From: Macrostomum lignano | Taxonomy: Eukaryota | Direction: 5' to 3' | Assembly: GCA_002269645.1 (NCBI GenBank) | Contig: NIVC01002154.1 | Span: 1 to 64,000 of the forward strand | DNA length: 64,000 nt | Shown: positions 11,473 through 60,295 of the stretch, in pieces | Layout of the letters: every line of letters begins with the position of its first letter | Numbering within the stretch: position 1 is the first letter of the stretch | Notes under the pieces: model-generated | What the model was told of the DNA's origin: nothing | The model's input: the letters and a program-made list of their open reading frames with translations, nothing else | The model's database searches: none | Made by a program: the position numbers and the translations under genes

Positions 11473-14400
11473 TCACGACACAACTTTAAAGCTTGTCCGC
11501 ACCCTGCAGTCGGCGCAACTCTCGTCGAAATAGTCGCCAACCAGCAGCCCATAGTTGCCGGGCAGCTGGCGCATGAGGCCGGCGCTGCCGTCCCACAGCT
11601 GCATGTCCCTGGCCAGGACGCTGAGGCTCACTGTCGATGCCGAGGAGCCGCTTTGCAGCCGGAATTTGCGAAAGCTGGCCAACCAGATGGTTGGATTTCT
11701 TCCCACGCCAGTCGGCGGGGTCAGGTACGCTTTGAGCACAATCGGGCACTCGGAGATGCCGCTAGTCGAAGCGTTGGCGGCTACCCGCAGGCTGAGGTGG
11801 AGGTCTTGGCCAGCCGAGATGCTCGCGGGAGCCGTCAGGTGGGTCAGCGAGAAGCGGCAGTAGGACAGGCCCTGTGGGGCATCGGTTTGAGCCAAGTTGA
11901 GCACAGATGATGCAGTCCCGCTAGGACCCACCAAACGCAAGGGACATATTCGTTGAATTCCTACTGAGTTTCATCCCAATTTGAGTTTCTAATCGATTAT
12001 TACCGGCGTAACTACGAGTTTCATCGCTTGTCTACGAGTACTCGTAGGAGACAGCCCGTTCCACTGACTAGGATCAGGCAGTGCAGAGCGCACACTGCGT
12101 CTTGTTGGTCCCCACGAGCGAGGATCGCGCAGTACCCAGGGATCGCGCGCAGGAACTCTGGAGCTCTGGTTTTAATCAAGCTCTGATTTACTGAGATACA
12201 AAAGCGCTCTTAGCATTGGCAGCACTGTTTGGTTGAAGAACTTGGTAATTGAGTGTGTTATGCTAAGACTGGCATCTTCTCAGACTGTTTTCTTAAGACT
12301 TCTCAAGACAAAAATCACCCATATTATCGGTGTTTCCTGTCGAATTCTACAAGAAGTTATCATTGTAGTTGGTTTGATCTTGGGACTTGACTTTGGATCC
12401 GCTTCCGGAGATTAAAGTTGCGGCCCAAAGTTTCGAACAAAGCTTCGGCTTTCTGCTCGCAACAGATCCCAAACAACAGGGATCCCAGTCGGAGCTCACC
12501 TGGCCAAAGCGGAACAGAGGCGGAGGCGAGCCGGACCAGGGCTCGGAGAAGCGGTAGGTCTGGTTGCGCGCAGCCAGATCGTAGTCGGTGATGCTGGGCA
12601 GCTGGGCGCGCTCCGACGGCCAGGTGAACGGCAGGGCGGCCGATGGCGAGTAGCGCCCGGTCAGCAAGTTGATGAGCGCCTGCCAGTTCAAGAGTGAATC
12701 AGTTGGTATTTGAAGCAACCTCCCCTACTGCAAGTAGGAGTGAGAGCGTTAGGTAATCAGAAATGGTAGAAGACAATCAAACGACCCGCAGCGACAAAAA
12801 CGTATTCATTTTAGATATCAGGTTAAAGGCTTAACGTTTTTTTTCAAAAACTTCTTCTTGAAATCATTTTCAACTTTTGGCTCTTAGAGGCTACAATGGA
12901 AAATAGACACGGCACTAATAACATTATTAAATACCACCATATGCACTGCACACCGTCAACCCCCACACAATCAAAACCCCCACATTCCAAACCTGCACCC
13001 ACGCACCGGTCCGAAGGTCTGCGCGGGATAGCCGCACCAGACCACCGCTCGTACGCTGTCATTGCCAATCGCCTCGTCCAGGCCGACGGGAGCTCCGGAC
13101 ACCACGGCCAGCACAACCGGCCTGCCGCTGGCGGTCAGCAACCGCAGCAGGGCAAGCTGCCCGTCCGGCAGGGTGAGCTGCCGCCGGTCCAGCGCCTCGG
13201 TCTCGATGTCAACGCTGGTGCCAACAACGGCTAACAGAACGTCGCTCTGCGCGATCAGCGAAGACACCGCGGCCGGATCCTGTCGAGTGCAATAGACTCC
13301 GCCGTCTGTGCAGTAGGTCGCGTGACTGAAGGGCGAGATCAGGGCGGCTGCGCTGGGTGGCTGCGATCAGAAATGCCTCTCCATTGAACTCTCTCTGCTC
13401 TCTTTCATCCGCTCTCTTCTCTACGCCGCTCCTTCCATTCGCTCCACTCTCTTCACTCTGTTTCACTTTGTCCAACTTATCCGCTCTTCACACTCTTGTC
13501 TTACGCTTTCTTCTCTCCTCTCTTCCCTGCTCTCGGCTTCAAACTCTACCATCTGCTATATTAGACATCTGCCAACTCATTTTACTACCCTTCCGTCTCC
13601 ACTCCCAAGCGATCACACCTGACTTTATCAGCACCGAATCGCTCCTTGAGCGCCGGCAGCAGCGGCTGCTCAAACTGCGGCATCCGATTCGGCGAGTAGT
13701 CGCCGTAGACCAGCGACATGTCGTCGGACAGCGGGCCGACCACGCCCAGGCGGAGGCCGGGCCGCTTTATCAGGCCGTCGGGCAGAAAGCCGCCGAGGTT
13801 CTTCAGCAGCACCAGCGAGGTCTGGGCGGCCGTCAAGCTGAGCGCCCGGTGAGCGGCGGACTGGATGAACTGGTCGGGCCGAAGGCTGGAGTAGGGGTTC
13901 AGGGCCGGCGGGTCGAACTCACCCAGCCGCAGGCGGGCAAGGAACAGCGGCCAGGCGGCGGCCCGCAGCTCCGCCTCGGATATCCGGCTGGTGTTCAGCG
14001 CTACTGAGAGCTGCTCAAAGACCACGCAGGACTCGTAGGGGCAGGCGGACAGGTCAAGGTTGACGCCTGCTCTCAGGGACCCGATGGCAGAGCTCTGCGG
14101 GCGGGAAGAATTGGTTGGGAGGGTTGGGAGAAAAACGAAGAGGAGAGAGACCCGATGGAAACGGTACCTAGGCCAAGAAGCGTCGCGTCAAAATAGTTTT
14201 AGAGTCGTTGCAGGTAACACAGGTAAAATACGAAGAAAGCGACTCTAGACGACTCCTAAAAGACAATATGTTACGGTACAAGTTGCCAAAAAGTCAATTC
14301 CATGTGTTTTATTGTCTGCAACTCTAGGGAGAGACGCAAGTGAGTCTGGGGCCGCAGAGTCGTATCTGAGGCGTGCTGGAGTTGCTGTAGAGAATCGCTA

Positions 14401-16518
14401 GAGTCACTAGTGAGTTGTTTTCAATGACGTTTTCTTTGGGAGACAGAGAAGGAAGAGAGGGGAGATGAGGAGCCACGGGGAGATAAGAACGGATGATAAG
14501 GGAGATGGTGAAGTTCTCTGCACGATGAATATTAGGAACTCAAGGTCTTCCAATGAGCGAGGCAGCAGTAAAAGTCACCCCAGCGCACCAGGCGGTCCGC
14601 AAAGTATTTGTGGAAGAGGATGGCGAACTCCAGCGCTCCGGCGTCGCTCACAACGTAGCCGGTGAAGTTCCAGCGCTCCCGAAGGACTCCGCGCAGCAGC
14701 TGAGCGTTGGCGCAGGCGGGCACCCCGTTGATGGCGTTGTAGCTGCACATCACGCTGACACTGCCGGCCTCAACGCAGCGCCGGAACTGCGGCAGGAAAG
14801 TCTGCTCCAGATCCTGTTGGCTGACCAGCGCGTTGAAGCCAAAGCGCGACTCCGGATAGCTGTCGGGGCCGTCGTAGGCGGCGAAGTGCTTGCAGCCGGC
14901 GCCTGTGAGCAGGTAGCGGTTAGTGGCGTTGCCCTGCGGGCAGGTGAGCAGAGGACTCGAACTATAAGGTCACTTGTGAGATGAGCTTCTCAAAAAAGTA
15001 GTCACAAAGGTTAAAAGCTTGCACAAGTCCTTTAACTGTCAGGGTTATTGAGACACAGAATTCACGGTCATTGGATCAGAGATTTCAGGGTAATTGGGTC
15101 ACCGAATTCAGGGTCATTGGGTCAGAGAATTCAGGGTCATTGGGTCAGAGAATTCAGGGTCATTGGATGAAGGAATCCCGGGTCAATGGATCACAATGTT
15201 GCCAGAGCCAACCTGCAGTCCTCCAACGTAGGCGGCCCCCAGCACACCGCTCAGGTGAGGATCTTCCCCGTAGGTCTCCTGGTTGCGGCCCCACAGTGGG
15301 TGCCGCAGGATATTAATCACCGGAGCGAAGCACGTGAGCCCTGTGTGATCGCCGTAGTCGCCCTTGGCGACGAAGTCGTTGTGCTTGGCGCGAACCTCCA
15401 GGCCGGTGGCGCGGCCAACTTGGCTGAGAATGTCCGGATCGAAGGTGGCGGCCAAGCCGACCGCCTGGGGGAAGGAGGTGGCCTGGCCGGACTTGACGGC
15501 GCCGCGCAGGCACTCAGTGTTCCACTGGTACGGCCCGATGCCAAGGCGGGCGATGGCGGGCGCCGGGCCACCAAACGGGCCGACGCCGCCCTTGGCCAGC
15601 TGCTGCACCAGCTCCTGCGGGCAGTGGGGGCTTGCCGGTTTGTTTTCAAGATTTTTTGCGAACATTGTGGGGGCGTTTATGCAACTTTTGGGTCATTGAT
15701 GCCAAAATGTGATTGATGGGCATCAGCACAAGTTACCGGCCGATATTTTGGTTGGGTTGCATCCATATATTTTAGAGGTTTTTTTATGCGGACATCTACC
15801 TGACGCTTTATGTGAACGATTTCAACGTCTTCATCCAGCCATTTTCGGGGATGTTTATGCGGATTTTTGTGAACGATTTAAGGGTGTTTATGTGACTCTT
15901 TTTTACATCCTATGAACCTATTTTCAAGAGTAATTGGGCAGAAGATTTCTAGGGTGATTACAGATTGGCCGGATGTTTTTATATAATAATAATAATTGAC
16001 TACACCTGCCCCAATGCGCAGATGTGCAACCGACAGCTCAGCCGCAGCTATTGTGCTGCGCATCTGAAGGCTGCGTACGGCTGTTCAGTCCCAAGGACTG
16101 GAGGGTCGCCACACACACCCTCAATTACCCTAGTTAATGCTGGTACTCATTTCACAACTGGTTTGACTGAAGCAATGCAGAGTTAAGTGTCTTGCTCAAG
16201 GACACAAATTGTTCAGAGTGGGTCGAGAATCGAACCCCCGACCTTTCAGTCGCTTCAACTCCCTCCGAATGCTTGAACTAAAAACTGTGGATGTTGAATT
16301 CAAGAACGCAATGTTTTTACGATGCAAAAACAGGCGAAAACTGGGGCAGGCTTTCCTGGCTCGGCATTGCCCGCCTTCCCCCTCACCTGAGCAGTCAGGC
16401 GGCCAACCAGATCGTCGGCCCGGTCCGGCCACGGGAGGCTGACATTGCGAAACGGGAAGTCTTCATCAGCCTGGCAGGCCGCCGCCAAGCTCAGTAGCAG
16501 GAGCAGCAATCGAAGCAT
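11473..16518 (-). CDS. Secreted glycoside hydrolase family 3 beta-xylosidase/beta-glucosidase-like protein, 7 exons, ~750 aa
   Basis: Exons 16518-16387, 15614-15213, 14933-14589, 14094-13619, 13325-13007, 12679-12500, 11871-11473; all GT-AG and phase-consistent (2253 nt). Signal peptide MLRLLLLLLSLAAACQA; GH3 motifs WGRNQETYGEDP, CKHFAAY, MCSYNAINGVPAC and GYVVSD (nucleophile Asp); C-terminal Fn3-like domain. Confidence 0.93.
15063..15190. repeat. 23-bp minisatellite (~5 copies) in GH3 intron 2
   Basis: Unit cagggtcattgggtcagagaatt. Confidence 0.85.
15980..16290 (-). mobile_element. tRNA-derived SINE with CORE-like central domain, in GH3 intron 1
   Basis: The minus strand has a B-box GGTTCGATTC (16227-16236), then gtgtccttgagcaagacacttaactctg...tgtgaaatgagtacc, which resembles the MIR/CORE-SINE core, and a (TAT)n tail near 15983-15996. 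Confidence 0.6.
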
Positions 16519-17107
16519 CTCTGTCTGCTTGACGTTGGCTCAGCGTTTATTTTACCTGGAAAACAAAATTGAAACTAAATTAGCGCAGGTGGTCTCATAG
16601 GCAGATCGTTTATCTTTTTTACACGTAGCGCGATCGCTCGTACAGATGATACTGCAGTGCAAAGGGCGGCAAGGCGATCGACTGCACACTGTGGGGTAGA
16701 GCTGTGCTGCGCATTGCCCAGGGGCAGTATTGACTCGAAAGCCTGAGAGAGATACGATATTCGCTATAGCTGGGGCATGGACAGCTAACGCTGCACTGGC
16801 AAATCGTGACAATTTTTGCTGGAGGCTGCAGGTTTTCGCTGCAAAATGCATTGGCGAGTAGGGAATTTTTGTTTTTACAAGTATAGCACTAAATTCTAAA
16901 CTGCAAAGAACTGACGAGTGAGTAGTAAAAAATAATTATTTGGACAGCAAACTTCCTCTTCGGTTTTGGAGATTATCACCATTTTTATAGTCTATGACCG
17001 AGACGGTGACAAGGTTAATCGTGGCGTGCTCAGCCCAACCCATGGCAGTGACTTGAGGCTGCCTGAGCTGCCGCAATAATTTGCCTTCGCAAGCCGCGTT
17101 GGCCAGC

Positions 17108-18178
17108 ATGAAGCTGGACTACTACGACATCTTGGGGCTGTCGAGAGCCGCAAAGGCCAACGAAATCACCGAGGCTTACAAACAGCTCGCTGAGCAGTGA
17201 GTAATTTGCTAGCGTTAAATAATCAGACTTAAACGCCAAATCGAAATATTGAGGCCTGAAGCAAGTCCAGAGGCTTGGGCAGGTATTAGACATGTATTCT
17301 TACTCGTACCTCTTGAGACTAGGACAGGTGTTAGAAACATAATCACTCATACCTCAATCAGCATGATTCAGCAAAGCTTCTGTGCCCGCAAACCGGTCTC
17401 CAGGTGGCACCCGGCCAACAATCCGGGCTACGAAGCCCGGGCAGAGAAGCGCTTTCGCAGGATTAGCGAGGCCTATCAAATCCTCTCGGACCACAAGCGC
17501 AGGTATCACTACAAAAAGGCGCTGAAGAAGGCGGCCAAGCCCTTTGTGAAAAAGCCCGGTTCCTCCATGCAGTTACTCAACGAGGAATGCGCCGGCCCAG
17601 TACAAGTTGAGAAGGCCAGAAGCGAAAGTAGCAGCAGCCTGAGCAGCGTACTGTCTGAGAGCGGGTCGAAAGCGGCAGAGGAGCCGGTGGTCCTGGGTCA
17701 CAAGTACGCGCACGCGCAGCCCAAGGGACTGCCGGACGAGACGGCCCTGGGCAAAAACCTCATGATTCAGCAGGTGGGGGGAAACACCGTCACGTGCTTC
17801 CCCGAGACGCTGCTGTCGCTACGCAACCCGTACCGCGTCTACAACGAGGTGGTTGGCGGCGCGAAGCCCAACAAGAGTCCGTGGACCTACTGCGAGCAGC
17901 TGGTGGAGTGGCACATTGCCTCCATGGCCAAGCTCACCGACGTCCTTGACGTATTCGGCAACAAGACGGTGATCACCACGATTGACTACACCGATGGCAT
18001 GAAGAACATCAAGGTGAAGCGGAACGGCAAGCTGGTGCAGAACTTCAGCGTCAGCGTGAAGCCGGAGGACTGGCAGGAGGAGGAGCGGGAGACGAAGCGC
18101 GGGGCCGGGCACATCATCATCATTGATGAGGCGCCTGACCCGCCGCCAGGCATGCGGCGGCTGCCCAGAGACCCGTGA
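17108..18178 (+). CDS. DNAJB6/B2-like J-domain protein, copy 1 (HPD replaced by HPA), 287 aa
   Basis: Exons 17108-17196 and 17404-18178 (phase 2). MKLDYYDILGLSRAAKANEITEAYKQLAEQWHPANNPGYEARAEKRFRRISEAYQILSD; later LRNPYRVYNEV and a C-terminal beta-type segment ending NGK. Confidence 0.88.
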
Positions 18179-18900
18179 CGACCGAATCTCACGGCCTATA
18201 CACTTCTAATCATAATTTTCTGTTATTATTTAAATGGAAGATATTACGATATTTGGATTTTGCTTTCTTGAGGCATCATTTTAAGACCGGGCATTTTATA
18301 CCTTTTGGTTTTTCTGAGCTTTACTCTTTCCGAGACTGCCAGGTGTACACGGAATATCGCCGTAAAAGGGACTCAATAATATCAAGGGCACAGCTCCAAA
18401 GACAGCTCGAAATCTACGAGAATAGAAGTTGAAAGTGCATCAAATGAGATAGGAGAGTTATGATCTTTCAGTTTTATTCAATAAATTGACCACTCCACAC
18501 CTGGACTTTTCGGATAAACATTTGAACCCATTACGCTCATATAATCTGCATCAGCTAATTAAACAAATACTATAACTACATTTTATGAGTATATTGGAAG
18601 TTCAGGTGAGAAAATCATTTTCTGCGATTCTGTATTCAAGGTACTTAAAGGCCAATGGTTAGCAGAATCGGCTTTCCATTCCAGGTTTTTAATTCTAGAA
18701 GCCCGTGGATCAAGACGATTATTTTCTGTCTTGGCGAGGAAGTGAAGATGTTTGACAAATAAGACCACAGACTATTCGAGTTCGGTCACGGGTGAAGTAG
18801 CTAAGGCCATCTTTAAGTAGAGCTGATGAAGTACTTAACAGCTCAAGACGGGTGGCCCTTGCAGCGAACTTGAGATTTGTTTCGGAGAAAGCAGGCCACA

Positions 18901-21041
18901 ATGAAGTTGGACTACTATCAAGTTCTGGAGCTGCAGCAAACTTCCGACCCGAAGATAATCAAAGATGCTTACCTGCGATTGGCCACTAAGTGAGTCGCAA
19001 GGACAAATAATTGAAATTGGAGCGTTCTTGATCGAGATTGATAACTGACCAGAATGTCCGATCAAGAGTGCGTTGAGCTGACCAGAATGTCCGGTGAAGA
19101 GTGCGTTGAGCTGACCAGAATGTCCGGTGAAGAGTGCGTTGAGCTGACCAGAATGTCCGGTGAAGAGTGAGTTGAGCTGATCAGAATGTCCGGTGAAGAG
19201 TGAGTTGAGCTGATCAGAATGTCCGGTGAAGAGTGCGTTGAGCTGACCAGAATGTCCGGTGAAGAGTGCGTTGAGCTGAGCAGAATGTCCGGTGAAGAGT
19301 GCGTTGAGCTGACCAGAATGTCCGGTGAAGAGTGCGTTGAGCTGACCAGAATGTCCGGTGAAGAGTGCGTTGAGCTGACCAGAATGTCCGGTGAAGAGTG
19401 AGTTGAGCTGAGCAGAATGTCCGGTGAAGAGTGAGTTGAGCTGACCAGAATGTCTGATGAAGAGTGAGTTGAGCTGACCAGAATGTCCGGTGAAGAGTGC
19501 GTTGAGCTGACCAGAATGTCTGATGAAGAGTGAGTTGAGCTGACCAGAATGTCCGGTGAAGAGTGCGTTGAGCTGACCAGAATGCCTTATTACTCGTAGT
19601 TTGCAGTGGCTTTGGTACTGCAAAAATTGTGACAACAGTCTATCCACAGCCGGCGAGGATCCAAGCAGTCATGCCTGTTCCACTGATGCACTCTCGCAAA
19701 CGAATACGAGGCTTATGCATGCAGGCACACGTTCACACAGGTTGTATAGCGACTCCGGTTCTCATTGTCAGGCATGTATGCCTCAGGGGCTAGGGCTAAC
19801 CGCAGAGCTATTCTGCTCTCCTCCAAAAACTGCAATGCTAGGAGTCAAATTTCACGAGTGTTTTGTAGCGACCAGATAGTCCAATTAGGGGTCTGTGACT
19901 GTGACTCACTGACTAACTAAACTAACAAATTGTGATTAATAACAAACAAACAGTCAGTTGTGGAAATTTAAATATTTCATTCATGCGAAATCGCGAATAC
20001 AAGTTGCAGATTCGGTGTTATTATGCTACTGTCAATAGTGTTCAACTAATGTACGCCGTATTCAATCGTCGCTTTTATTCCTCAATGCGTAAATTCTTCT
20101 ATTCAATCTCGATCTCAAGCAGCACCTGTACACCAGAAATCAATTTGCGTTTCAACCCTGATTATCAGCTTCCCATTGCCTCACTCCGACCAAATCACTC
20201 CCTTGCCAATCTGACACCAAGGTGGCACCCGGAGAACAACCCGGACAACAAGGCGGAGTCTGAGCGGCACTTCTTCCGCATCAGCGAGGCCTTCCAGATT
20301 CTGTACTGCAACGAAAAACGCAAACGCTACCTGCAGTGCCTTTTGAAGTCTAACGCACAGGACCTCGAAAAGAACGACGTTAAATCCAAGGAGTCGCGAG
20401 TCAAGCAGGAATCCACCATGGAACTGGACCAGTTAACCGAGGAATTCGAGACGGCACTCAGGAAGAACTTCCTCAGCGAGAAGTCGGAGAGCGGAGAGGC
20501 GCTCTCTTTCCCGTCCAACCTAATCTCTCTGCGGGATCCGTACAAAGTGCACGTCGAGGCCGTCTGCAACTCGCCGTCTGACCTCAGCGACCGGGCCTTC
20601 TGCGAGCAGCTGGTGCAGCGGCACATCGCCAAGGGCACCCGTCACACCAAGAATGTGGACCCGTTCGGCAACAAGATTGAAATTACCACCGTGCAGTCAA
20701 CTGGCGGTGAGATGACCCTTAATGTAACCCGCAACGGCAAGGAGGTGGACATGAGAATCAAGGGGCTGACCACCAAGTTGACCAACGTCTCCAAGGCAAT
20801 GACAGTCTCGGTTGGTCCCATATCGCAGCGCGGTGGTGGTCCCAGCTCACAGCATGGTGGTCCCAGCTCGCATCATGGTGGTCCCAGCTCGCACCACGGT
20901 GGTCCCAGCTCGCACCACGGTGGTCCCAGCTCGCACCATGGTGGTCCCAGCTCGCACCACGGTGGTCCCAGCTCGCACCGCGGTGGTTCGCACAAAACAA
21001 CATCCGTGTTGACAACAAAAAGTACCAAGACTAACAAGTGA
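18901..21041 (+). CDS. DNAJB6/B2-like J-domain protein, copy 2 (HPE), 302 aa, with GGPSSHH tail
   Basis: Exons 18901-18989 and 20222-21041 (phase 2). MKLDYYQVLELQQTSDPKIIKDAYLRLATKWHPENNPDNKAESERHFFRISEAFQIL. Confidence 0.88.
19044..19586. repeat. 33-bp minisatellite (~16 copies) in the intron of J-copy 2
   Basis: Unit gagtgcgttgagctgaccagaatgtccggtgaa. Confidence 0.95.
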
Positions 21042-21492
21042 ATGGTGGAGGACAGCCAAAAGTTATAAAGGATTTGGAACTGGAAGATAAGAGAGCAAAG
21101 TCTGCTTACGACGAGTGCTTTTGATCGGTGCACTCTCATTTTCTAACTCTCACTCGACCTGCAAACCAAATTTCCGGACACCGAACCTCTGTTATTAAAA
21201 GCGTTTTAAAAAGAATAATTCATTTCAATTCACTGAGCTTCAGTAGCATTGAAGATTTTTTTGTTTATAAGGTCAACCCAAGACATTTTAGTTCAAAAAA
21301 ATATACAGATCTTGATTTTGCACTAAACCAACAATCCTTTTCAACACTCGCTACGACACCTTACGACATGTGCTAATTAAAGTATTTTAGCTCGCGCAAG
21401 CGTAGTCTATGGCACAACCGTATTTGCGTGCATATTCTGGAAAGCACACAAGTGATGCTAATTAGAATAGTAAGATTAGCAAAGACGAAACC

Positions 21493-22340
21493 ATGTCCAA
21501 CCCCGAGGACTTTTACGCCATTCTGGAGGTGCCTCCATCGGCCACGGCCAGGAGATTAAGGAGGCGTACAAGCGACTGGCACTAAGGTGAGATTTTACCA
21601 AAGATACCAAAGAGATACCTCATACCAAAGAGAAGTAAAGATGACATTGTGAATGCTAGATGTCAGTAAAGTGCGTGATGTCTAGTGATGTCAGTAAATG
21701 ACAAAAGGCGAAGTACCTGTAAGAATGTCAGCAGGGTGTATGAAAGGCTCGTAATTAAGACTCGAGAAATGTATCAATTAAGTGCCAGCAAAGCACCAGA
21801 AAAAGATGAGTTCAGCAAGATGCGCTGAAAAGGCGGAAAACGGTCATTGCCAACCCTAACTCACCCGCGCACTGCACTTCGCACCACTGCTCCAGGTGGC
21901 ACCCGGACAAGAACCCGAACAACCGACCGGAGGCCGAGCTGCGATTCCGCAAGCTGTCCGAGGCCTACCAAGTGCTGTCGGACCCGAGCCGCCGGGCGGA
22001 CTATGACCGCACTCGCCGCAGCTCCCACGGTCCGCGGCCGGGTGGCGGCAGCTTCAGGTGGAGCAGCACGACAGCCGAGCAGCTGCACCGGAACCTCTGG
22101 AGCGCCTTCCGCGACCCGTTCTTCGTCTATAACGAAGTGTTCAGCAGTGCCGGCGTCGGCAACGATGGAATTGTCGGGCAGTTCAGCGCGGTCAGCGAGA
22201 CGACCACGGAAGACGGGCAGGGCAACCGGACGGTCGTCAGAACGACAGTCGAGAACGGGGTAAAGGTGACGACGGTGTTCAAAAACGGCGAGCAGACGGA
22301 GCAGACCACCACGGCTCTGAACCAGCTGGCTCGGCGCTGA
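21493..22340 (+). CDS. DNAJB6/B2-like J-domain protein, copy 3 (canonical HPD) with an apparent 1-nt frameshift in exon 1
   Basis: Exons 21493-21586 and 21896-22340. [18 protein letters not shown] / [50 protein letters not shown], with [12 protein letters not shown]. As written, the ATG frame stops at 21583-21585; adding one base near 21547-21550 gives 179 aa. Confidence 0.8.
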
Positions 22341-22570
22341 GCTGAAATCAAATCATCAAGTATCAACTGACTACTGGAAGTAGCCTGAGCAGCGTTTCTG
22401 TAAACTTTTACCAATTTCATTTAATAAAAAATAGCCTTCGTTTTGCATTCAAAACTGCCGATTTGAATAAGAAAACCAAAATGCACTCTATGGCAAGAAT
22501 TCGATCCCGAGTCCGTATATAGATTTGAGACAAAATCTGGAAACTGATCCGCGCTCTGACGGCAAGATTC

Positions 22571-24450
22571 ATGGCCGAGGATTTCTACTACGAGGTGCTG
22601 GGCGTGTCGGGCTTGTCCAGCAAGCAGAGCATCGAATCTGCCTACAGACAGCTGCGTGAGCGGTGAGTTCTCGCCTGCTTTGAAAAGCTTTGACATATTA
22701 GAACTAATATTCAATTTAGATTAGCAGTCCGTGCTACACTACTAAATCTATAATTAGCTAGATAAGCATTCCACTCCGTAATTCCAGCTGGCATACTGGC
22801 TAGATTCGCAATCCACTCCGTTATTCCAGCTGGCATACTGGCTAGATTCGCAATCCACTCCGTACTTCTAGCTGGCATACTGGCTAGATTCGCAATCCAC
22901 TCCGTACTTCTAGCTGGCATACTGGCTAGATTCGCAATCCACTCCGTACTTGCAGCTGGCATACTGGCTGGATTCGCAATCCACTCCGTTATTCCAGCTG
23001 GCATATTGGCAAGATTAGCAATCCACTCCGTAATTCCAGCTGGCATATTGGCTGGATTAGCAATCCACTCCGTAATTCCAGCTGGCATATTGGCTGGATT
23101 AGCAATCCACTCCGTAATTCCAGCTGGAATGTTGGCTGGATTAGCAATCCACTCTGTAATTCCAGATGGCACCCTAGCAACAACCCTGGCAACGAGTACG
23201 AGGCGTCAAGGCGCACACAGCAGATCTACCAGGCCTACATGACCCTGGCCGAGCCCTACCGAAGACAAACCTACGACGGACTGCGAAGCAACCAATACTT
23301 CAGGCAGAGACTGCGGGACCACTGCAGCGGCTGGGCCGGCCATCTGGGCTACGACTCGACCCGGCGTGACCTGAACTACAACGACTCGACTGCGCGCCTT
23401 ATCCATGAGTTCGCGCCAACCGTGCTGCTGCTATTCTATCCAGTGGAGCCCAGCGTGTCGATGCCCGCCTACCGCGGCTCGATGCCGTTCGGTCAGACGC
23501 AGGCGCCGATGATGCACCAGCAGCGCCCAATGAGCTTCGGTGCGCCGAAAAGCTTTTCGGGCGTTCCCAAGCTTATGGGCTCGGCCATGGTCGGCGGCCT
23601 GGCTGGCGGCCTCGCCGGCGGCCTGGCCAGGAGCGGCCCCAATATTGGCATTCCGAAGTGGGGTGGCCTGTCGAGGGGTGGCCTGTCCAGGGCTGGCCTG
23701 TCCAGGGGTGGCCCGTCCAAGGATGGCCTGTCCAGAGGGCTGTTCGTGGGCGGCTTGCTCGGGGGACTGTTCAGAGGAGGCCTGTCTGGGGGCGGCCGGT
23801 CGTGGGGCGCTAAGCCTCGGCGCGCCAAGCCGTGGATTGCCAACAGAATGATGCAGCCCAGATGCTCCCCAGACGAGGAGGACGACGATGATCAAGATGA
23901 GAGCGATCACGACATGGATCACGATCAATTCGATCACGATATGAGTCATGACTTATTTGATCACGGTATGAGCCATGACCAGTTCGATCACGGTATGAGC
24001 CATGACCAGTTTGATCACGGCATGAGCCATGACCAGTTCGATCACGGTATGAGCCATGACCAGTTCGATCACGGTATGAGTCATGACCAGTTTGATCACG
24101 GCATGAGCCATGACCAGTTCGACCACGGTATGAGCCATGACCAGTTCGATCACGGTATGAGCCATGACCAGTTTGATCACGGTATGAGCCATGACCAGTT
24201 TGATCACGGTATGAGCCATGACCAGTTTGATCACGGTATGAGCCATGACCAGTTCGATCACGGTATGAGCCATGACCAGTTTGATCACGGTATGAGCCAT
24301 GACCAGTTCGATCACGGTATGAGCCATGACCAGTTCGATCACGGTATGAGCCATGACCAGTTCGATCACGGTATGAGCCATGACCAGTTCGATCACGGTA
24401 TGGACTATAATGGCGACTTTGATGGTGGCTTCGACGGAGGAGCAGACTGA
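22571..24450 (+). CDS. Divergent J-domain protein, copy 4 (HPS), 458 aa, with Gly/Arg-rich linker and DHGMSHDQF repeat tail
   Basis: Exons 22571-22662 and 23166-24450 (phase 2, total 1377 nt). MAEDFYYEVLGVSGLSSKQSIESAYRQLRERWHPSNNPGNEYEASRRTQQIYQAYMTLAEPYRRQTYD. Confidence 0.82.
22769..23171. repeat. 42-bp minisatellite made of the splice-acceptor region of J-copy 4
   Basis: Unit ccactccgtaattccag-ctggcatactggctagattcgcaat; the last copy ends ttccag|atggcaccc, the acceptor that gives the uninterrupted J-domain. Confidence 0.93.
23905..24402 (+). repeat. 27-bp coding repeat DHGMSHDQF (16 exact peptide copies plus 2 degenerate)
   Basis: gatcacggtatgagccatgaccagttc repeated from 23959 to 24390; the nucleotide variants are all third-position synonymous. 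Confidence 0.95.
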
Positions 24451-24676
24451 CAAAAATCAACGCAGTGACCAGCAGCTGACCAAACTGTGACTTTCATTTT
24501 ATCATTCATTTGAGTGCCGATAAATATAAAATCTATTCTGAGAAGTCATGTTTCAGGAACGACTGTACATTGTGGTGGGGCAGGGAAGGTCGGGAGCGAG
24601 TGTACGTTGGGGTGAGGCAGAGAACGCCGGGAGCGAGTGAAAATTGGGGTGAGAGAGGGAAAATCGGAAGTGTACA

Positions 24677-25262
24677 ATGGGGTGGGGCAGGGAGGGCCGG
24701 GAGCGAGTGTACATAGGGGTTGGGCAGGGAGGGCCGGGAGCGAGTGTACATTGGGGTTGGGCAGGGAGGGCCGGGAGCGAGTGTACATTAGGGTTGGGCA
24801 GGGAGGGCCGGGAGCGAGTGTACATTAGGGTTGGGCAGGGAGGGCCGGGAGCATTGGGGTTGGGCAGGGAGGGCCGGGAGCGAGTGTACATTGGGGTTGG
24901 GCAGGGAGGGCCGGGAGCGAGTGTACATTAGGGTTGGGCAGGGAGGGCCGGGAGCGAGTGTACATTGGGGTTGGGCAGGGAGGGCCGGGAGCGAGTGTAC
25001 ATTAGGGTTGGGCAGGGAGGGCCGGGAGCGAGTGTACATTGGGGTTGGGCAGGGAGGGCCGGGAGCGAGTGTACATAGGGGTTGGGCAGGGAGGGCCGGG
25101 AGCAAGTGTACATTAGGGTTGGGCAGGGAGGGCCGGGAGCGAGTGTACATTGGGGTTGGGCAGAAAAGGCCGGGAGCGAGTGTACATTGGGGTTGGGCAG
25201 GGAGGGCCGGGAGCGAGTGTACATTAGGGTTGGGCAGGGAAGGCCTGGAACGAGTGTACCTT
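24677..25262. repeat. 37-bp G-rich minisatellite between J-copy 4 and ARMC8
   Basis: Unit gggcagggagggccgggagcgagtgtacattggggtt. Confidence 0.95.
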
Positions 25263-25943
25263 GGGATGAGGCAGGAAAGGCCTGGAACGAGTGCATGCTA
25301 GCAAATGGTTACGATTAGAGCTATTCGAGTTTAAGTTATTTAGCTTGCAATATGCAGTTAATGTTTACAGCTAAGATTACTGTTTAGACATTTATGAGAT
25401 AAACCGATAAGTACTTATATGAGAAAGTGGTTAAACAGTTATAAGCTCGGCAGGGCAGCTGTCCTCCAACTGTCCCAAGTACTGTATTACGGGGTCTTAT
25501 GCTAGGACACCTTTTTCCTGCAGTTCTGAGATCAAATAAGCAAAGAAATGATTTAAGTTAAATTTTTCAAAAAACGATCTGATGTATTTTTGAGTATGCC
25601 AGCGCAATGACCATCATCAGTGAGAGCGGTGTGTGCTAACAGGTTCAGCAATTGTTAGAATTTCAATGAACTGATGTTCAGTTTAAAAAGCACTGCAATC
25701 GAAAACAATAAACTGGTCGTTATAAAAAGGGGAGCAGACGGGGTCGCGAGGTCAGAGGGGTAAAATAGGCGGGAAGCGCTCTGTCAGACAAGTTCCGCTG
25801 TGGCCAATAGACTGCGCCACGAGGCAGTAAAAGCAGCAACTAGAATGGGATAAAATTGGGAATAAAATGTCGCAATGTAACACTTAGACTAAAGATTGAA
25901 CAAATGGCGATTGAATAGTGTTAGGCAGTTTAGAATAAATAAA

Positions 25944-31666
<5,723 letters not shown>

Positions 31667-39981: not shown

Positions 39982-52122
<12,141 letters not shown>

Positions 52123-54239: not shown

Positions 54240-54695
54240 ATACATAATGGACTGGGGGTTGGGGTGGGGCTTGGCGTACATAATGGATTGGGGTGGGGCT
54301 TGGTGTACATAATGGATTGGAGGTTGGGGTGGGGCTTGGCGTACATAATGGATTGGGGTGGGGCTTGGCGTAAATAATGGATTGGGGGTTGGGCTTGGCG
54401 TAAATAATGGATTGGGGTGGGGCTTGGCGTAAATAATGGATTGGGGGTTGGGCTTGGCGTAAATAATGGATTGGGGTGGGGCTTGGTGTACATAATGGAT
54501 TGGGGTGAGGCTTGGTGTACATAATGGATTGGAGTGGGGCTTTGCGTACATAATGGATTGGGGAGCTTGGCGTACATAATGGATTGGGGAGCTTGGCGTA
54601 CATAATGGATTGGGGGTTGGGGTGGGGCTTGGCGTACATAATGAATTGGGGAGCTTGGCGTACATAATGGATTGGAGTGAGGCTTGGCGTAAATA
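54240..54695. repeat. ~25-35 bp minisatellite (ggcttggcgtacataatggattggggt)
   Basis: Directly visible. Confidence 0.9.
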
Positions 54696-55829
54696 ATGAA
54701 ATAATGGACGCCTAAGTAAGGAGGCGGGGCTAGAGTAAATTTCGGCGGGCATAAATGATGAGGCAACCAAGACAATAGAATGCCGCAAACAAGTAGGAGT
54801 TCACAGTGGAATGAAGCAGCGCATGAAAAAACTACAGCAGCCAGCATCCGTTTCAGAGAGACATCAAAGGCGAGGCGGCTAACTGCCCCATGCGGTTGAC
54901 AGGCGGACACGGCCGGCCGGAAAAAACAAAATGAGCCCGGCGCGGAGGCCGCTCCAGAGGAGGAACAGCTGGAACAGCCAAGACCGACCGCCAACCCCGA
55001 GGAGCGTAGCTTTATTTCTTTGAGTTAAAGTGAAGAAAAACGCGATGAATCCGCTAGACAAAATAAAGGCAACGCAGTTGATAAAGAGAGCTTTACAAGT
55101 GTAATGTTAAGAATTTCGGCGTGATCATAATTACAATTTTAAAAACACTTGAAAAAAATTATAACTTCACGTATTAAAACGAATCAATTTTAATAATAAG
55201 TCACAAATATTTTATTTATTTTGTTTATCTTTTCCATTTCCGGCTGAAAAGATTTTCGAAACAATGGCTCATACAGGAGTGCACAGCGGCTGTACTGACG
55301 CCGGCACATACGAAATAATATAGCGTCGCTCTGGATCGAGTAGGCTACGGCCCCCTGGATTACACATGCAGGCAAGACACATTTCAGGGTGGAAAATTAC
55401 TGGATGGCACATTATATCCTCCTTACATACATCCTCCTTGGTGAGGAATGAAGGGGTGCAAAACAGAGGGAAGGAGAAGCCACAGGAAACAGAAGTACGG
55501 CCAGACCTGCGTCTTTTGTTAATTAGCGCGCTCTCAAGGAGCCCGTTGCCAGGGACGCCAATGCCTCTCCTCTCTGCACCCCACCTCTCCTTCCCCCTAA
55601 GACTGAAGCGGACAATTAGCAATCGGAACAAGGACCACTAGTTTAGACGTCTTTGCATCGGAAGCGATGCAACGAGATGCGAAAATAGATAGAAATAGAT
55701 GGGCTTTGGGCTCTGGCACGGACCAACTGTTGACAGTTGCAACAGTGCATGGCAACCAGCAATTTTTAGCATCCAAGCTGCATTCATTCCCGATAAATAT
55801 GCACGAAACAAAACAGCAGGACTGCACAG

Positions 55830-57457
55830 CACACTTTGATCTTGAAAGTGCGAGCCTCAACCCTTCTGCTGGCAGTTCTGTGCTGCCTCGCCCTGCGCCA
55901 CTCCATGGCTGCCGAGTTCGCTCCCCTGGGCTGCTTCATCGACTTCTCGGAAGATGGGAGCCGCGACCTCAACGGCCTGGCGGGCTGGTCCAACGTCTCT
56001 GCGGCTACGGCAACTTCAAGTACTTCGGCGTCCAATTCCACATCGAATGCTATTGCGGCAACTCGTACGGCAGTTTTGGCGCGGCACCGGACGCCGACTG
56101 CTACGCCAAATGCGCTGGCAACCCCGCCCAGATGTGCGGAGGAGCAATGCGGATCTCCGTGTACCGCCAGATCTACCTGCGCTCCGGTGAGGCAACAGCT
56201 TGATTACAGAATTTGGTGCAGTGCAGCGTTTAGGCCTACCTTGACCGACTATTCAAAAGCATTCGATATTAGTTAATAGAATATTAGAAAATATCTTAGC
56301 AAGTTTGATGAAAATCGAATTTAGCTGTTTGTCCCTTCAACCAGCAATAAACTTGTGAAACCCTCAGACCAAGACACCCTTCAACCAGCAATAAACTTGT
56401 GAAACCCTCAGACCAAGACACCCTTCAACCAGCAATAAACTTGTGAAACCCTCAGACCAAGACACCCTTCAACCAGCAATAAACTTGTGAAACCCTCAGA
56501 CCAAGACACCCTTCAACCAGCAATAAACTTGTGAAACCCTCAGACCAAGACACCCTTCAACCAGCAATAAACTTGTGAAACCCTCAGACCAAGACACCCT
56601 TCAACCAGCAATAAACTTGTGAAACCCTCAGACCAAGACACCCTTCAACCAGCAATAAACTTGTGAAACCCTCAGACCAAGACACCCTTCAACCAGCAAT
56701 AAACTTGTGAAACCCTCAGACCAAGACACCCTTCAACCAGCAATAAACTTGTGAAACCCTCAGACCAAGACACCCTTCAACCAGCAATAAACTTGTGAAA
56801 CCCTCAGACCAAGACACCCTTCAACCAGCAATAAACTTGTGAAACCCTCAGACCAAGACACCCTTCAACCAGCAATAAACTTGTGAAACCCTCAGACCAA
56901 GACACCCTTCAACCAGCAATAAACTTGTGAAACCCTCAGACCAAGACACCCTTCAACCAGCAATAAACTTGTGAAACCCTCAGACCAAGACACCCTTCAA
57001 CCAGCAATAAACTTGTGAAACCCTCAGACCAAGACACCCTTCAACCAGCAATAAACTTGTGAAACCCTCAGACCAAGACACACGCTCGCTGCGAATAAAC
57101 CGCTCCATACTTGCACCAGATCAATAACACTGTATGCTTTCTCAGCGACATTGGGCCTGCAATTAGTTTTTATCGTTACTATCAGCGGAACTTCCAAGAT
57201 CTCAACCGTGCAAATTTCCCTTGTTCCCGTGCAATGTGTTCACTCGGTCCGAAAAAGTCTACCTGAACGTGACATCCTCTAGTGGGCCCCTCTACCGGAC
57301 CGTGCAGCCCGTGACGGACCTGACCGACTGCATACTCAGCTGCGGTGCCGACTGCCAGGCCGTGCTGTTCCACCTGGACGCCTGCTACCTGCTGAGACTG
57401 CCCGTTCTGCCGCACGAGCTACAGGACGTACCTGGGGAATTCTTCCTTCGCGTGTGA
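55830..57457 (+). pseudogene. Signal peptide + WSC carbohydrate-binding domain + Cys-rich PAN/apple-like domain gene, frameshifted within WSC (pseudogene or assembly error)
   Basis: LLLAVLCCLAL signal and LGCFIDF...RDL are in one frame; RLCGYGNFKYFGVQFHIECYCGNSYG...CAGNPAQMCGGAMRISVY is in another, switching near 55986-55997. Donor after 56186, acceptor before 57186, stop at 57457. Confidence 0.65.
56333..57081. repeat. 44-bp perfect minisatellite (17 copies) in the WSC gene intron
   Basis: Unit cccttcaaccagcaataaacttgtgaaaccctcagaccaagaca; no spacers and no variants seen. Confidence 0.96.
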
Positions 57458-59829: not shown

Positions 59830-60295
59830 TGGCGTGGTCTGGGGTGCGTGTTGAGGTTAGAGTTGGAGGGCTTGGTCTGGGGTGCGTGTTAAGGTTAGAG
59901 TTGGAGGGCTTGGTCTGGGGTGCGTGTTAAGGTTAGAGTTGGAGGGCTTGGTCTGGGGTGCGTGTTAAGGTTAGAGTTGGAGGGCTGGGTCTGGGGTGCG
60001 TGTACATTGGGGTTAGAGTTGGAGGGCTGGGTCTGGGGTGCGTGTACATTGGGGTTAGAGTTGGAGGGCTGGGTCTGGGGTGCGTGTACATTGGGGTTAG
60101 AGTTGGAGGGCTGGGTCTGGGGTGCGTGTACATTGGGGTTAGAGTTGGAGGGCTTGGTCTGGGGTGCGTGTACATTGGGGTTAGAGTTGGAGGGCTTGGT
60201 CTGAGGCGTGTGTTCATTGAGGTTAGAGTTGGAGGGCTTGGGTGCGTGTACATTGGGGTTAGAGTTGGAGGGCTTGGTCTGGGGTTGGAGCGCTG
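59830..60295. repeat. 38/42-bp G-rich minisatellite
   Basis: Unit ggggtgcgtgtacattggggttagagttggagggctgggtct. Confidence 0.93.

What the first reader, a model, noticed from the sequence alone, without database searches (positions are those of the whole stretch)
17108..24450. Tandem array of four DNAJB6-like genes, three of which have lost the HPD motif
Seen: four head-to-tail two-exon genes share a phase-2 intron immediately before the Trp of WHPx. Their loops read WHPAN, WHPEN, WHPDK and WHPSN. The rest of the J-domain (YYxxL, helix II AY, FxxISEAYQIL-type helix III) is kept, and copies 1-3 keep the RNP/RDP..Y.E and C-terminal beta motifs of the DNAJB6/B2/B8 family. Established: the HPD Asp is required for J-domains to stimulate Hsp70 ATPase, while DNAJB6-type C-termini suppress aggregation. 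Inference: a lineage-specific family of Hsp70-uncoupled or decoy J-like proteins. Three different substitutions at the same Asp in otherwise intact ORFs suggest selection for altered function rather than decay.
Basis: partly seen in the sequence, partly recalled or inferred. Interest (0 to 1): 0.8.

Follow-up and report, generated by a model that had tools for sequence, protein, structure and literature searches.

The report
Flatworm testis J-protein array lacking HPD
Four neighbouring DNAJB6-like co-chaperone genes of the flatworm Macrostomum lignano are real, three have replaced the aspartate needed to switch on Hsp70, and these three look like maintained, probably testis-expressed 'pseudo-J' proteins of an already known kind, while the one canonical copy carries a frameshift in this sequence.

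Summary
The array is real. Four head-to-tail two-exon genes (17108-24450, + strand) all match Pfam DnaJ. All share a phase-2 intron just before the Trp of WHPx, and the loops read HPA, HPE, HPD and HPS. The organism is Macrostomum lignano: copy 1 is 100% identical to GenBank PAA47171.1.

- Exon 1 of the only HPD copy (copy 3) is frameshifted here. One C is missing at 21548-21549, giving TAA at 21583-21585. It is intact in GenBank contig NIVC01004548.1.
- HPE (copy 2) is the one replacement reported as tolerated.
- Copies 1, 2 and 4 also lost other near-invariant J-domain residues.

The HPD-less copies do not look like decaying genes. Their reading frames are open although synonymous sites between paralogues are saturated (dS ≥ ~1). 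GC3 is 0.72-0.83 against 0.38-0.44 in non-coding DNA. Copy 1, and a product at copy 4's position, are in an annotation built only from RNA-seq. Published tables class the Mlig000041 entries as testis-region, germline-enriched genes; one has exactly copy 4's CDS length.

Copies 1-3 keep the DNAJB6 architecture; copy 4 keeps only the J fold. They fit the known 'type IV / pseudo-JDP' category. This is a new member of a known kind, of moderate interest. Selection at the Asp site and a 'decoy' role remain untested.

The parts
17108..17196 (+). Copy 1, exon 1 (89 nt; helix I and helix II of the J-like domain)
   Evidence: The spliced model gives 287 aa, 100% identical to GenBank PAA47171.1 (BOX15_Mlig000041g5).
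17404..18178 (+). Copy 1, exon 2: WHPAN loop (Ala codon GCC at 17414-17416), disordered Ser-rich linker, RNPYRVYNEV helix, CEQLVEWHIA helix, four-strand beta C-terminal domain
18901..18989 (+). Copy 2, exon 1 (89 nt)
   Evidence: identical in L001.
18990..20221 (+). Copy 2 intron, with a 33-bp x16 minisatellite at 19045-19584 (about 40 units in the GenBank contig)
20222..21041 (+). Copy 2, exon 2: WHPEN loop (Glu codon GAG at 20232-20234), RDPYKVHVEA motif, CEQLVQRHIA, beta C-terminal domain, (GGPSSHH)x7 coding repeat at 20835-20987
21493..21586 (+). Copy 3, exon 1 (94 nt). Frameshifted in this window: the CC run at 21548-21549 is CCC in GenBank contig NIVC01004548.1, and there is an in-frame TAA at 21583-21585
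21896..22340 (+). Copy 3, exon 2: canonical WHPDK loop (Asp codon GAC at 21906-21908), [12 protein letters not shown] helix-5 motif, DNAJB6-type beta C-terminal domain
   Evidence: With the frame restored as in L001, it aligns over residues 6-178 to DNAJB6b 6U3R (E 4e-24).
22571..22662 (+). Copy 4, exon 1 (92 nt)
22663..23165 (+). Copy 4 intron, mostly a 42-bp x10 minisatellite made of copies of the 3' splice site plus the Trp-His codons (nine decoy acceptors)
23166..24450 (+). Copy 4, exon 2: WHPSN loop (Ser codon AGC at 23176-23178), Gly/Leu-rich low-complexity region, (FDHGMSHDQ)x17.6 coding repeat at 23929-24402; no DNAJB6-type C-terminal domain
   Evidence: The CDS is 1377 nt, the same length as Mlig000041.g1 in Brand et al. 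2020 Table S8.

Best explanation
This is a tandemly duplicated cluster of DNAJB6/DNAJB8-like (non-canonical class B) J-domain protein genes of the flatworm Macrostomum lignano. It is part of that species' reported very large HSP40 expansion.

Copy 3 is the canonical member. It has HPD, a basic helix II, the helix-5 motif and a beta-sheet C-terminal domain.

Copies 1, 2 and 4 are old, diverged paralogues that have stayed open, codon-biased and (at least copies 1 and 4) transcribed. Published tables point to expression in the testis and germline. Their Asp is replaced by Ala, Glu and Ser, and other Hsp70-contact positions are eroded. The hydrophobic core and the predicted J fold are intact.

They therefore belong to the known category of 'type IV' or pseudo-J-domain proteins.

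Inferred mechanism:
- Copies 1 and 4 no longer trigger Hsp70 ATP hydrolysis.
- Copies 1 and 2 retain the DNAJB6-type client-binding and oligomerising C-terminal domain. They probably act as Hsp70-independent holdases, or as subunits that dilute or tune Hsp70 recruitment in mixed oligomers during spermatogenesis. The J-like fold would be kept as a structural docking module for helix 5 and the C-terminal domain.
- Copy 2 (HPE) may keep a weakened or partner-specific Hsp70 coupling.
- Copy 4 keeps only the J-like fold, joined to a disordered His/Asp-rich repeat tail, and has probably taken on a different role.

Shown: gene structures, family membership, loop residues, intactness, composition, and transcript-derived annotation. 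Inferred: loss of ATPase stimulation, holdase or modulator role, testis function.
For: - Gene models and loops.
- Pfam DnaJ for all four.
- Organism, and the exact protein match for copy 1.
- The GenBank annotation is built only from RNA-seq transcripts (PMC5730564). It contains copy 1 and a 436-aa product at copy 4's coordinates.
- Copy 3 aligns over its full length to DNAJB6b 6U3R. The J domain of copy 1 is closest to DNAJB6, B8 and B2.
- AlphaFold model of copy 1: confident J domain, helix at 172-179, four strands at 207-247. The top Foldseek hit is 6U3R.
- The J-like fold of copy 4 has pLDDT 94-97 and the rest is disordered.
- In a comparison with 75 HPD J domains, copy 3 departs at no column conserved at 90% or more. 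Each of copies 1, 2 and 4 loses several such residues on the helix II / loop / helix III face but keeps the core. Helix II net charge is -1, +1 and +1, against +3 in copy 3 and +5 in DNAJB6.
- Paralogue dS is about 1 or more with dN 0.4-0.75. GC3 is 0.72-0.83 against 0.38-0.44 in introns and intergenic DNA.
- The chance that the exon-2 frames are open is 3e-4 to 2e-7.
- There are 0/1752 substitutions in the CDS of copies 1+2 against 11/3807 in adjacent non-coding DNA (p = 0.02).
- Mlig000041.g1 (1377 nt, equal to the copy 4 CDS) and .g4 (1350 nt) have counts of 16/551/643/474 and 20/783/842/584. They are classed 'Testes', germline_FACS and OvI_up.
- Established knowledge: D->N abolishes ATPase stimulation, type IV JDPs exist, and HPE is tolerated (PMC13254874). 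DNAJB6 and DNAJB8 suppress polyQ fibrillation independently of HSPA1 and ATP, and DNAJB8 is testis-only (PMC3933622). [quoted passage not shown]
Against: - No biochemical data exist.
- Transcription of copies 2 and 3 is not shown; neither is in the GenBank annotation.
- The testis assignment for copy 4 rests on an identical CDS length plus a shared cluster prefix, not on a sequence match. The expression pattern of copy 1 itself was not found.
- dN/dS between paralogues is unreliable at saturation.
- No orthologue from another Macrostomum species was available, so purifying or positive selection could not be measured on any branch.
- The G/F-rich and S/T-rich regions typical of DNAJB6 are weak or absent, so anti-aggregation activity cannot be assumed.
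- In the GenBank contig, copy 4 carries a 12-nt deletion (NPGN) right after HPS. This suggests relaxed constraint on that J-like loop.
Confidence: 0.6

Rival explanations
1. The HPD-less copies are still functional Hsp70 co-chaperones. They would work with a co-evolved or specialised Hsp70 paralogue, as E. coli DjlB and DjlC (HPE) do with HscC. On this view the loop changes retune partner specificity rather than uncouple the proteins.
For: - HPE is reported as the only tolerated replacement and occurs in about 1% of roughly 280,000 J domains.
- M. lignano has expanded HSP families, with 163 HSPs of which 123 are HSP40.
- Copy 2 keeps three basic helix II residues.
- A designed J-domain analogue lacking HPD can stimulate Hsc70 (review).
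Against: - Ala and Ser are non-conservative. Even D->N abolishes stimulation.
- Copy 1 has also lost the basic helix II face, and copy 4 the invariant helix III Phe.
- No candidate partner Hsp70 was examined.
Confidence: 0.2
2. Copies 1, 2 and 4 are decaying duplicates (young pseudogenes or transcribed relics). The three loop variants would reflect neutral drift after one loss of function.
For: - The shared K->N next to the lost Asp and the weak clustering of the three copies fit a single relaxation event.
- Copy 4 shows a polymorphic 4-residue deletion in the loop and has lost conserved J-domain residues.
- Coding minisatellites vary between the two sequences.
Against: - The frames are open over 258-428 codons although synonymous sites between paralogues are saturated.
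- There is a strong GC3 excess over non-coding DNA in all copies.
- There are no substitutions in the CDS of copies 1+2, against 11 in the flanking non-coding DNA.
- The J fold and the C-terminal domain are predicted with confidence.
- Transcript-derived annotation exists.
Confidence: 0.1
3. The loop variants or the gene models are assembly or annotation artefacts.
For: The two available sequences differ by 12 single-base indels in about 11 kb, mostly in short runs, so consensus errors do occur. The copy 3 frameshift may be one of them.
Against: - The A, E and S codons differ from GAC by substitutions, not indels.
- They are identical in two independently derived sequences.
- The spliced product of copy 1 equals a transcript-derived GenBank protein.
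Confidence: 0.02

Closest known systems
Human DNAJB6 / DNAJB8 (Drosophila Mrj): non-canonical class B J-domain proteins
   Same: - N-terminal J domain, which is the closest PDB match for copies 1 and 3.
- Helix-5 motif FRxPxxV(F/Y)xE.
- Small beta-sheet C-terminal domain; copy 3 aligns to 6U3R over its full length.
- DNAJB8 is testis-restricted.
- Their anti-aggregation activity is largely independent of Hsp70 and ATP.
   Different: - DNAJB6 and DNAJB8 keep HPD and a strongly basic helix II.
- The flatworm copies have almost no G/F-rich region and only a weak S/T-rich stretch.
- Copies 1 and 2 carry an extra helix (CEQLV..HIA) and long charged or Ser-rich linkers.
- Copy 4 lacks the C-terminal domain altogether.
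Type IV / pseudo-J-domain proteins (e.g. human DNAJB13 with HPL; the 13 P. falciparum type IV JDPs)
   Same: - A recognisable J domain with the HPD Asp non-conservatively replaced.
- DNAJB13 has class B architecture and a sperm/axoneme role.
- The Plasmodium set is a lineage-specific expansion.
   Different: - DNAJB13 is a canonical class B protein (two beta-sandwich domains plus a dimerisation domain), conserved across eukaryotes and single-copy.
- Here the architecture is DNAJB6-like, and the genes sit in a tandem array next to a canonical sibling.
- They appear restricted to this lineage.
Pam16 (Tim16/Magmas) with Pam18
   Same: A J-like protein without HPD that pairs with and modulates a functional J protein. 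This is the precedent for the 'modulator in a hetero-oligomer' reading.
   Different: It is a mitochondrial class C protein with no sequence relationship beyond the J fold. No interaction between the flatworm copies has been shown.
E. coli DjlB / DjlC (HPE J domains working with HscC)
   Same: Natural HPE loop, as in copy 2, and still functional with a dedicated Hsp70.
   Different: These are bacterial proteins with an unrelated architecture. Copy 2 also has other departures at conserved columns (R->L, LSD->LYC, YD->YL).

Membership tests
J-domain protein (Pfam PF00226 DnaJ) | Sequence match to the J-domain profile above the gathering score (27.8 bits) | tested here: met
   The scores are 72.3, 61.4, 91.9 and 55.3 bits for copies 1-4, with the copy 3 frame restored.
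J-domain protein (functional Hsp70 co-chaperone) | His-Pro-Asp tripeptide in the helix II-III loop | tested here: not met
   Only copy 3 has HPD. Copies 1, 2 and 4 have HPA, HPE and HPS. HPE is a reported tolerated variant.
J-domain protein (functional Hsp70 co-chaperone) | Stimulation of Hsp70 ATPase | not testable with these tools
   This needs purified proteins.
Type IV / pseudo-JDP | A clearly recognisable J domain in which HPD is non-conservatively replaced (definition in PMC13254874) | tested here: met
   Met for copy 1 (HPA) and copy 4 (HPS), given the Pfam hits and confident J folds. Inconclusive for copy 2, because D->E is conservative.
DNAJB6/DNAJB8-like non-canonical class B | N-terminal J domain closest to the DNAJB6/B8/B2 J domains | tested here: met
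   The top PDB sequence hits for copies 1 and 3 are 6U3R (DNAJB6), 2DMX (DNAJB8), 2EJ7 and 2LGW (DNAJB2).
DNAJB6/DNAJB8-like non-canonical class B | G/F-rich linker after the J domain | tested here: not met
   Copy 3 has only GPRPGGGSF. Copies 1 and 2 have charged or Ser-rich linkers predicted to be disordered. Copy 4 has a Gly/Leu-rich region instead.
DNAJB6/DNAJB8-like non-canonical class B | Helix-5 (putative autoinhibitory) motif FRxPxxVFxEFF | tested here: met
   The motifs are [13 protein letters not shown] (copy 3), SLRNPYRVYNEVV (copy 1) and SLRDPYKVHVEAV (copy 2). They align to DNAJB6 FRNPDDVFREFF. In copy 1 the helix at 172-179 is predicted with a block-mean pLDDT of about 84. Copy 4 has only a low-confidence helix at 107-111.
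DNAJB6/DNAJB8-like non-canonical class B | Ser/Thr-rich region required for anti-amyloid activity | tested here: inconclusive
   Copy 1 has SESSSSLSSVLSESGS and copy 3 has short S/T runs. Neither is comparable in length to the human region. This was judged from the sequence only.
DNAJB6/DNAJB8-like non-canonical class B | Small C-terminal beta-sheet domain | tested here: met
   The alignment of copy 3 to 6U3R runs through the C-terminal domain. Copy 1 has strands at 207-247 with pLDDT 72-88 and 6U3R as top Foldseek hit, although the global TM-score is low (0.28/0.41) because of the disordered linker. Copy 2 shares 44% identity with copy 1 in this region. Copy 4: not met.

The most novel reading that the evidence does not exclude
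The locus records the birth of a cytosolic, DNAJB6-type counterpart of the Pam16/Pam18 arrangement. In this reading, testis-specific HPD-less paralogues keep the J fold only as a docking surface. They co-assemble with the canonical neighbour (copy 3) and so set how much Hsp70 is recruited to sperm-specific, aggregation-prone clients. The Asp replacements would then be adaptive, not accidental.
Probability: 0.15. Interest if true: 0.65.

Novelty: new member of a known kind. Interest (0 to 1): 0.35.

Why it matters
A 2026 review of J-domain proteins says it 'remains enigmatic' whether natural departures from HPD are accidents or are selected (PMC13254874). This locus offers a compact natural series in one array: HPD, HPE, HPA and HPS on related DNAJB6-like scaffolds. 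The animal has published transgenesis (PMC5730564) and, to my knowledge, RNAi. The published expression data point to the testis. That makes several things directly testable: Hsp70 coupling, anti-aggregation activity, hetero-oligomerisation and fertility phenotypes, copy by copy.

It also adds detail to the reported but unexplained 123-member HSP40 expansion of M. lignano (PMC9559072). It fits the pattern that reproduction-related genes evolve fast in this genus (PMC7336406). By itself it does not reveal a new kind of system.

Tried and rejected
1. A third database search used an alignment of all four proteins. It returned only generic bacterial and eukaryotic DnaJ proteins and not even copy 1, so it was uninformative.
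2. A profile of the C-terminal regions of copies 1 and 2 was searched against 1.84 billion representatives. The only hits besides copy 1 were spurious repeat proteins (an Ig-like repeat and a PepSY-like repeat). I use this only as evidence that no relatives are detectable.
3. Exact look-up of my models for copies 2, 3 and 4 found none in the collection. This includes the 436-aa model at the coordinates where the contig look-up lists a 436-aa gene; that discrepancy is unexplained.
4. Pairwise dN/dS between paralogues is saturated, with dS from 0.96 to 2.5. I use it only to show that the duplicates are old.
5. Codon parsimony at the Asp site: three independent changes from GAC need 4 steps, and a single loss followed by further change needs at least 5. 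The difference is too small to decide at this divergence.
6. The supplements of PMC5816591, PMC12896417 and PMC5946080 were searched for Mlig000041 and gave no hits.
7. Mlig000041.g2 (483 nt) could not be assigned to any copy. The only 483-nt ATG ORF nearby is the first coding exon of the GH3 gene on the opposite strand.
8. The source organism of P0013, the closest J domain to copy 3 (96% bootstrap), could not be resolved.
9. I considered whether the copy 3 frameshift could be bypassed. The protein has no internal Met, and the J frame upstream has no ATG. If the frameshift is real, the allele is null.
Full report
**What is in the sequence**

Reading 16500-25200 and splicing the obvious GT-AG introns gives four head-to-tail genes on the + strand.

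| Copy | Exon 1 | Exon 2 | Product |
|---|---|---|---|
| 1 | 17108-17196 | 17404-18178 | 287 aa |
| 2 | 18901-18989 | 20222-21041 | 302 aa |
| 3 | 21493-21586 | 21896-22340 | frameshifted here; 179 aa in GenBank contig |
| 4 | 22571-22662 | 23166-24450 | 458 aa |

- In each gene the intron is phase 2 and lies immediately before the Trp codon.
- The loops are W-H-P-A-N (GCC), W-H-P-E-N (GAG), W-H-P-D-K (GAC) and W-H-P-S-N (AGC).
- All four match Pfam DnaJ well above threshold. A tblastn scan finds no further J domain in the 64 kb.
- The exon-2 frames would be open by chance with probability 3e-4 to 2e-7.
- The core observation is therefore correct and is not a chance pattern.

**Source and an independent copy of the locus**

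- Copy 1 is 100% identical to GenBank PAA47171.1, 'hypothetical protein BOX15_Mlig000041g5 [Macrostomum lignano]'.
- The contig carrying it is NIVC01004548.1 of assembly Mlig_3_7, held here as L001. It is the same locus at 97-99% identity but is not the same sequence.
- It carries the same four genes and the same four loops. The A, E and S codons are therefore not read errors.

*1. The only HPD copy is broken in this window.*
- Its exon 1 is 94 nt, which is 1 mod 3. The other copies have 89, 89 and 92 nt.
- The ATG frame ends at TAA 21583-21585, and the J-domain frame has no ATG.
- L001 reads ACGGCCCAGG where the window reads ACGGCCAGG. This gives a 95-nt exon and an intact 179-aa protein.
- The two sequences differ by 12 single-base indels in about 11 kb, mostly in short runs. 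I cannot tell a consensus error from a real null allele.
- Copy 3 also carries the only two CDS substitutions found in copies 1-3 and exon 1 of copy 4. Both are non-synonymous.

*2. HPE is not a clear loss.*
- A 2026 review calls it 'the only replacement tolerated', citing E. coli DjlB and DjlC with HscC.
- A survey of about 280,000 J domains found HPE in about 1%.

*3. The Asp is not the only change.*

Equivalences to E. coli DnaJ numbering are from my memory of that literature.

| Copy | Departures at columns conserved at 90% or more |
|---|---|
| 3 | none |
| 1 | K->T at the 97% Lys (DnaJ R22 position); YD->YK |
| 2 | R->L at the 96% Arg (DnaJ K26 position); A->S; LSD->LYC; YD->YL |
| 4 | K->E; A->R; F->T at the 100% Phe (DnaJ F47 position); E->Q |

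- Net charge of helix II plus the loop is +5 in DNAJB6 and +3 in copy 3. It is -1, +1 and +1 in copies 1, 2 and 4.
- The core residues (Y, L, I, A, Y, L, A, L, R, Y) are kept in all four.
- AlphaFold predicts confident J folds for copy 1 (pLDDT 82-96) and copy 4 (94-97).
- The pattern is a preserved fold with an eroded Hsp70-binding face.

**Family**

- With its frame restored, copy 3 aligns from residue 6 to 178 with human DNAJB6b (6U3R, E 4e-24). The alignment includes the helix-5 motif and the C-terminal beta domain.
- The J domain of copy 1 is closest to DNAJB6, DNAJB8 and DNAJB2.
- The model of copy 1 has a disordered linker (78-167), a helix on RNPYRVYNEV, a further helix on CEQLVEWHIA and four strands (207-247, pLDDT 72-88). 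Foldseek ranks 6U3R first.
- Copy 2 is 44% identical to copy 1 across this C-terminal region.
- Copy 4 has no such domain. After the J-like fold it is predicted to be disordered, with a Gly/Leu-rich stretch and about 18 FDHGMSHDQ repeats.
- The G/F-rich linker that helps define DNAJB6-type proteins is essentially absent, and the S/T-rich region is weak.
- I therefore call copies 1-3 'DNAJB6-like' rather than orthologues.

**Maintained or decaying?**

- Between paralogues, synonymous sites are saturated (dS 0.96-2.5) while dN is 0.4-0.75. The duplications are old, yet copies 1, 2 and 4 are still open.
- GC3 is 0.72-0.83 in all four, against 0.38-0.44 in introns and spacers.
- Between the window and L001 there are 0 substitutions in 1752 nt of copy 1+2 CDS. 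There are 11 in 3807 nt of adjacent non-coding DNA (Fisher p = 0.02).
- These three lines argue against decay for copies 1 and 2.
- Copy 4 is less clear. L001 lacks 12 nt (NPGN) directly after HPS, and its repeat number varies.

**Transcription**

- The GenBank annotation of Mlig_3_7 is derived purely from RNA-seq transcript assemblies. Transcripts overlapping repeat annotations were removed (PMC5730564).
- It contains copy 1 with exactly my splice, and a 436-aa product at copy 4's coordinates.
- Copies 2 and 3 are absent from it. Given the repeat filter, this is not evidence against their expression.

In Brand et al. 2020 the Mlig_37v3 entries are CDS sequences (PMC7336406). Their supplementary tables list:

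| Entry | CDS length | Relation to this locus | Counts: head / +testis / +ovary / whole worm |
|---|---|---|---|
| Mlig000041.g1 | 1377 nt | exactly the length of the window's copy 4 CDS | 16 / 551 / 643 / 474 |
| Mlig000041.g4 | 1350 nt | one 27-nt unit fewer | 20 / 783 / 842 / 584 |

- Both are classed 'Testes', 'germline_FACS' and 'OvI_up' (up in octets versus isolated worms).
- The link to copy 4 is an inference from the identical length and the shared cluster prefix with copy 1 (Mlig000041g5).
- I could not place the third entry, Mlig000041.g2 (483 nt).
- The same paper reports that testis-, ovary- and tail-region genes have higher protein divergence and occur in fewer species. This fits the absence of any detectable relative of the copy 1/2 C-terminal region among 1.84 billion representative proteins.

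**One loss or three?**

- All three HPD-less copies share AAC (Asn) where copy 3 has AAG (Lys) right after the Asp codon.
- In a neighbour-joining tree of the J domains they group together, but weakly: 58% for the three, 69% for copies 1+2. Copy 3 groups at 96% with a J domain from another assembly.
- Codon parsimony slightly favours three independent changes from GAC (4 steps against at least 5).
- Neither argument is decisive.

**Mechanism**

Established knowledge:
- D->N or H->Q abolishes ATPase stimulation.
- DNAJB6 and DNAJB8 suppress polyQ fibrillation independently of HSPA1 and ATP, the J domain is largely dispensable for this, and DNAJB8 is testis-only.
- In DNAJB8 the C-terminal domain docks on the J domain and competes with Hsp70.

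My inference:
- Copies 1 and 4 are uncoupled from Hsp70.
- Copies 1 and 2 can still bind clients and/or oligomerise through the C-terminal domain. The J-like fold is retained as an intramolecular or oligomeric docking module.
- Copy 2 may keep a specialised coupling to Hsp70.

Rival readings are listed with their tests: a co-evolved Hsp70 partner, decay, and artefact.

**Comparison with what is known, and verdict**

- J domains with a replaced HPD are a recognised category, called type IV or pseudo-JDPs. Examples are Pam16, class B DNAJB13 (HPL) and 13 proteins in P. falciparum.
- The large HSP40 expansion of M. lignano is published (123 members).
- What is new here is a set of DNAJB6-like type IV members. 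They sit in one tandem array beside a canonical sibling, probably in the male germline of a tractable animal.
- The verdict is a new member of a known kind, of moderate interest. Its main value is as a test bed for whether HPD loss is selected.

Noticed in passing
window 22663-23165 (minisatellite 22757-23171): The 42-bp x10 minisatellite in the copy 4 intron is built from copies of the 3' splice site plus the start of exon 2. It contains nine decoy acceptors (TTCCAG, TTCTAG or TTGCAG), each followed by C TGG CAT.. (R-W-H..). Four of them hit TAG after five codons if used. The GenBank contig has one extra unit.
   Followed up: partly
window 19045-19584: A 33-bp x16 minisatellite in the copy 2 intron carries six donor-like GTGAGT sites. 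The same array is about 40 units long in the GenBank contig.
   Followed up: partly
window 20835-20987 and 23929-24402: Two in-frame coding minisatellites give His-rich tails: (GGPSSHH)x7 in copy 2 and (FDHGMSHDQ)x17.6 in copy 4. Both differ in unit number between the window and the GenBank contig (7 against 6 units, and two units fewer). The composition suggests metal binding, which was not tested.
   Followed up: partly
window 23176-23190 versus L001 ~16875: In the GenBank contig, copy 4 lacks 12 nt (AACCCTGGCAAC, coding NPGN) directly after HPS. The deletion is flanked by GCAAC direct repeats. It is an indel polymorphism inside the J-domain loop.
   Followed up: yes
window 11237-19044 and 19585-22756 versus L001: Substitutions between the two sequences are uneven. 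There are 35 in 4755 nt over the GH3 gene region, 11 in 3807 nt of non-coding DNA around the array, 0 in 1752 nt of copy 1+2 CDS, and 2 (both non-synonymous) plus the frameshift in copy 3. There are 12 single-base indels, mostly in short runs.
   Followed up: partly
window 15183-15665 (-) and ~11200-15700: A glycosyl hydrolase family 3 gene lies divergently upstream of copy 1; it is annotated as 474 aa in the GenBank contig. Its first-exon ORF is 483 nt, the same length as the unassigned testis-class entry Mlig000041.g2.
   Followed up: partly
whole window; e.g. 24556-25293, 26114-26683, 54259-54698, 59831-60285, 43752-46150: The window is exceptionally rich in minisatellites: about 30 arrays score 300 or more. 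Several share a GTACAT...GGGG core. One array has 98 copies of a 25-mer and another has 17 perfect copies of a 44-mer (56333-57081).
   Followed up: no
window 62405-63352 (-): This ORF has Peptidase_M13 and M13_N domains, so it is an exon of a neprilysin-like gene.
   Followed up: no
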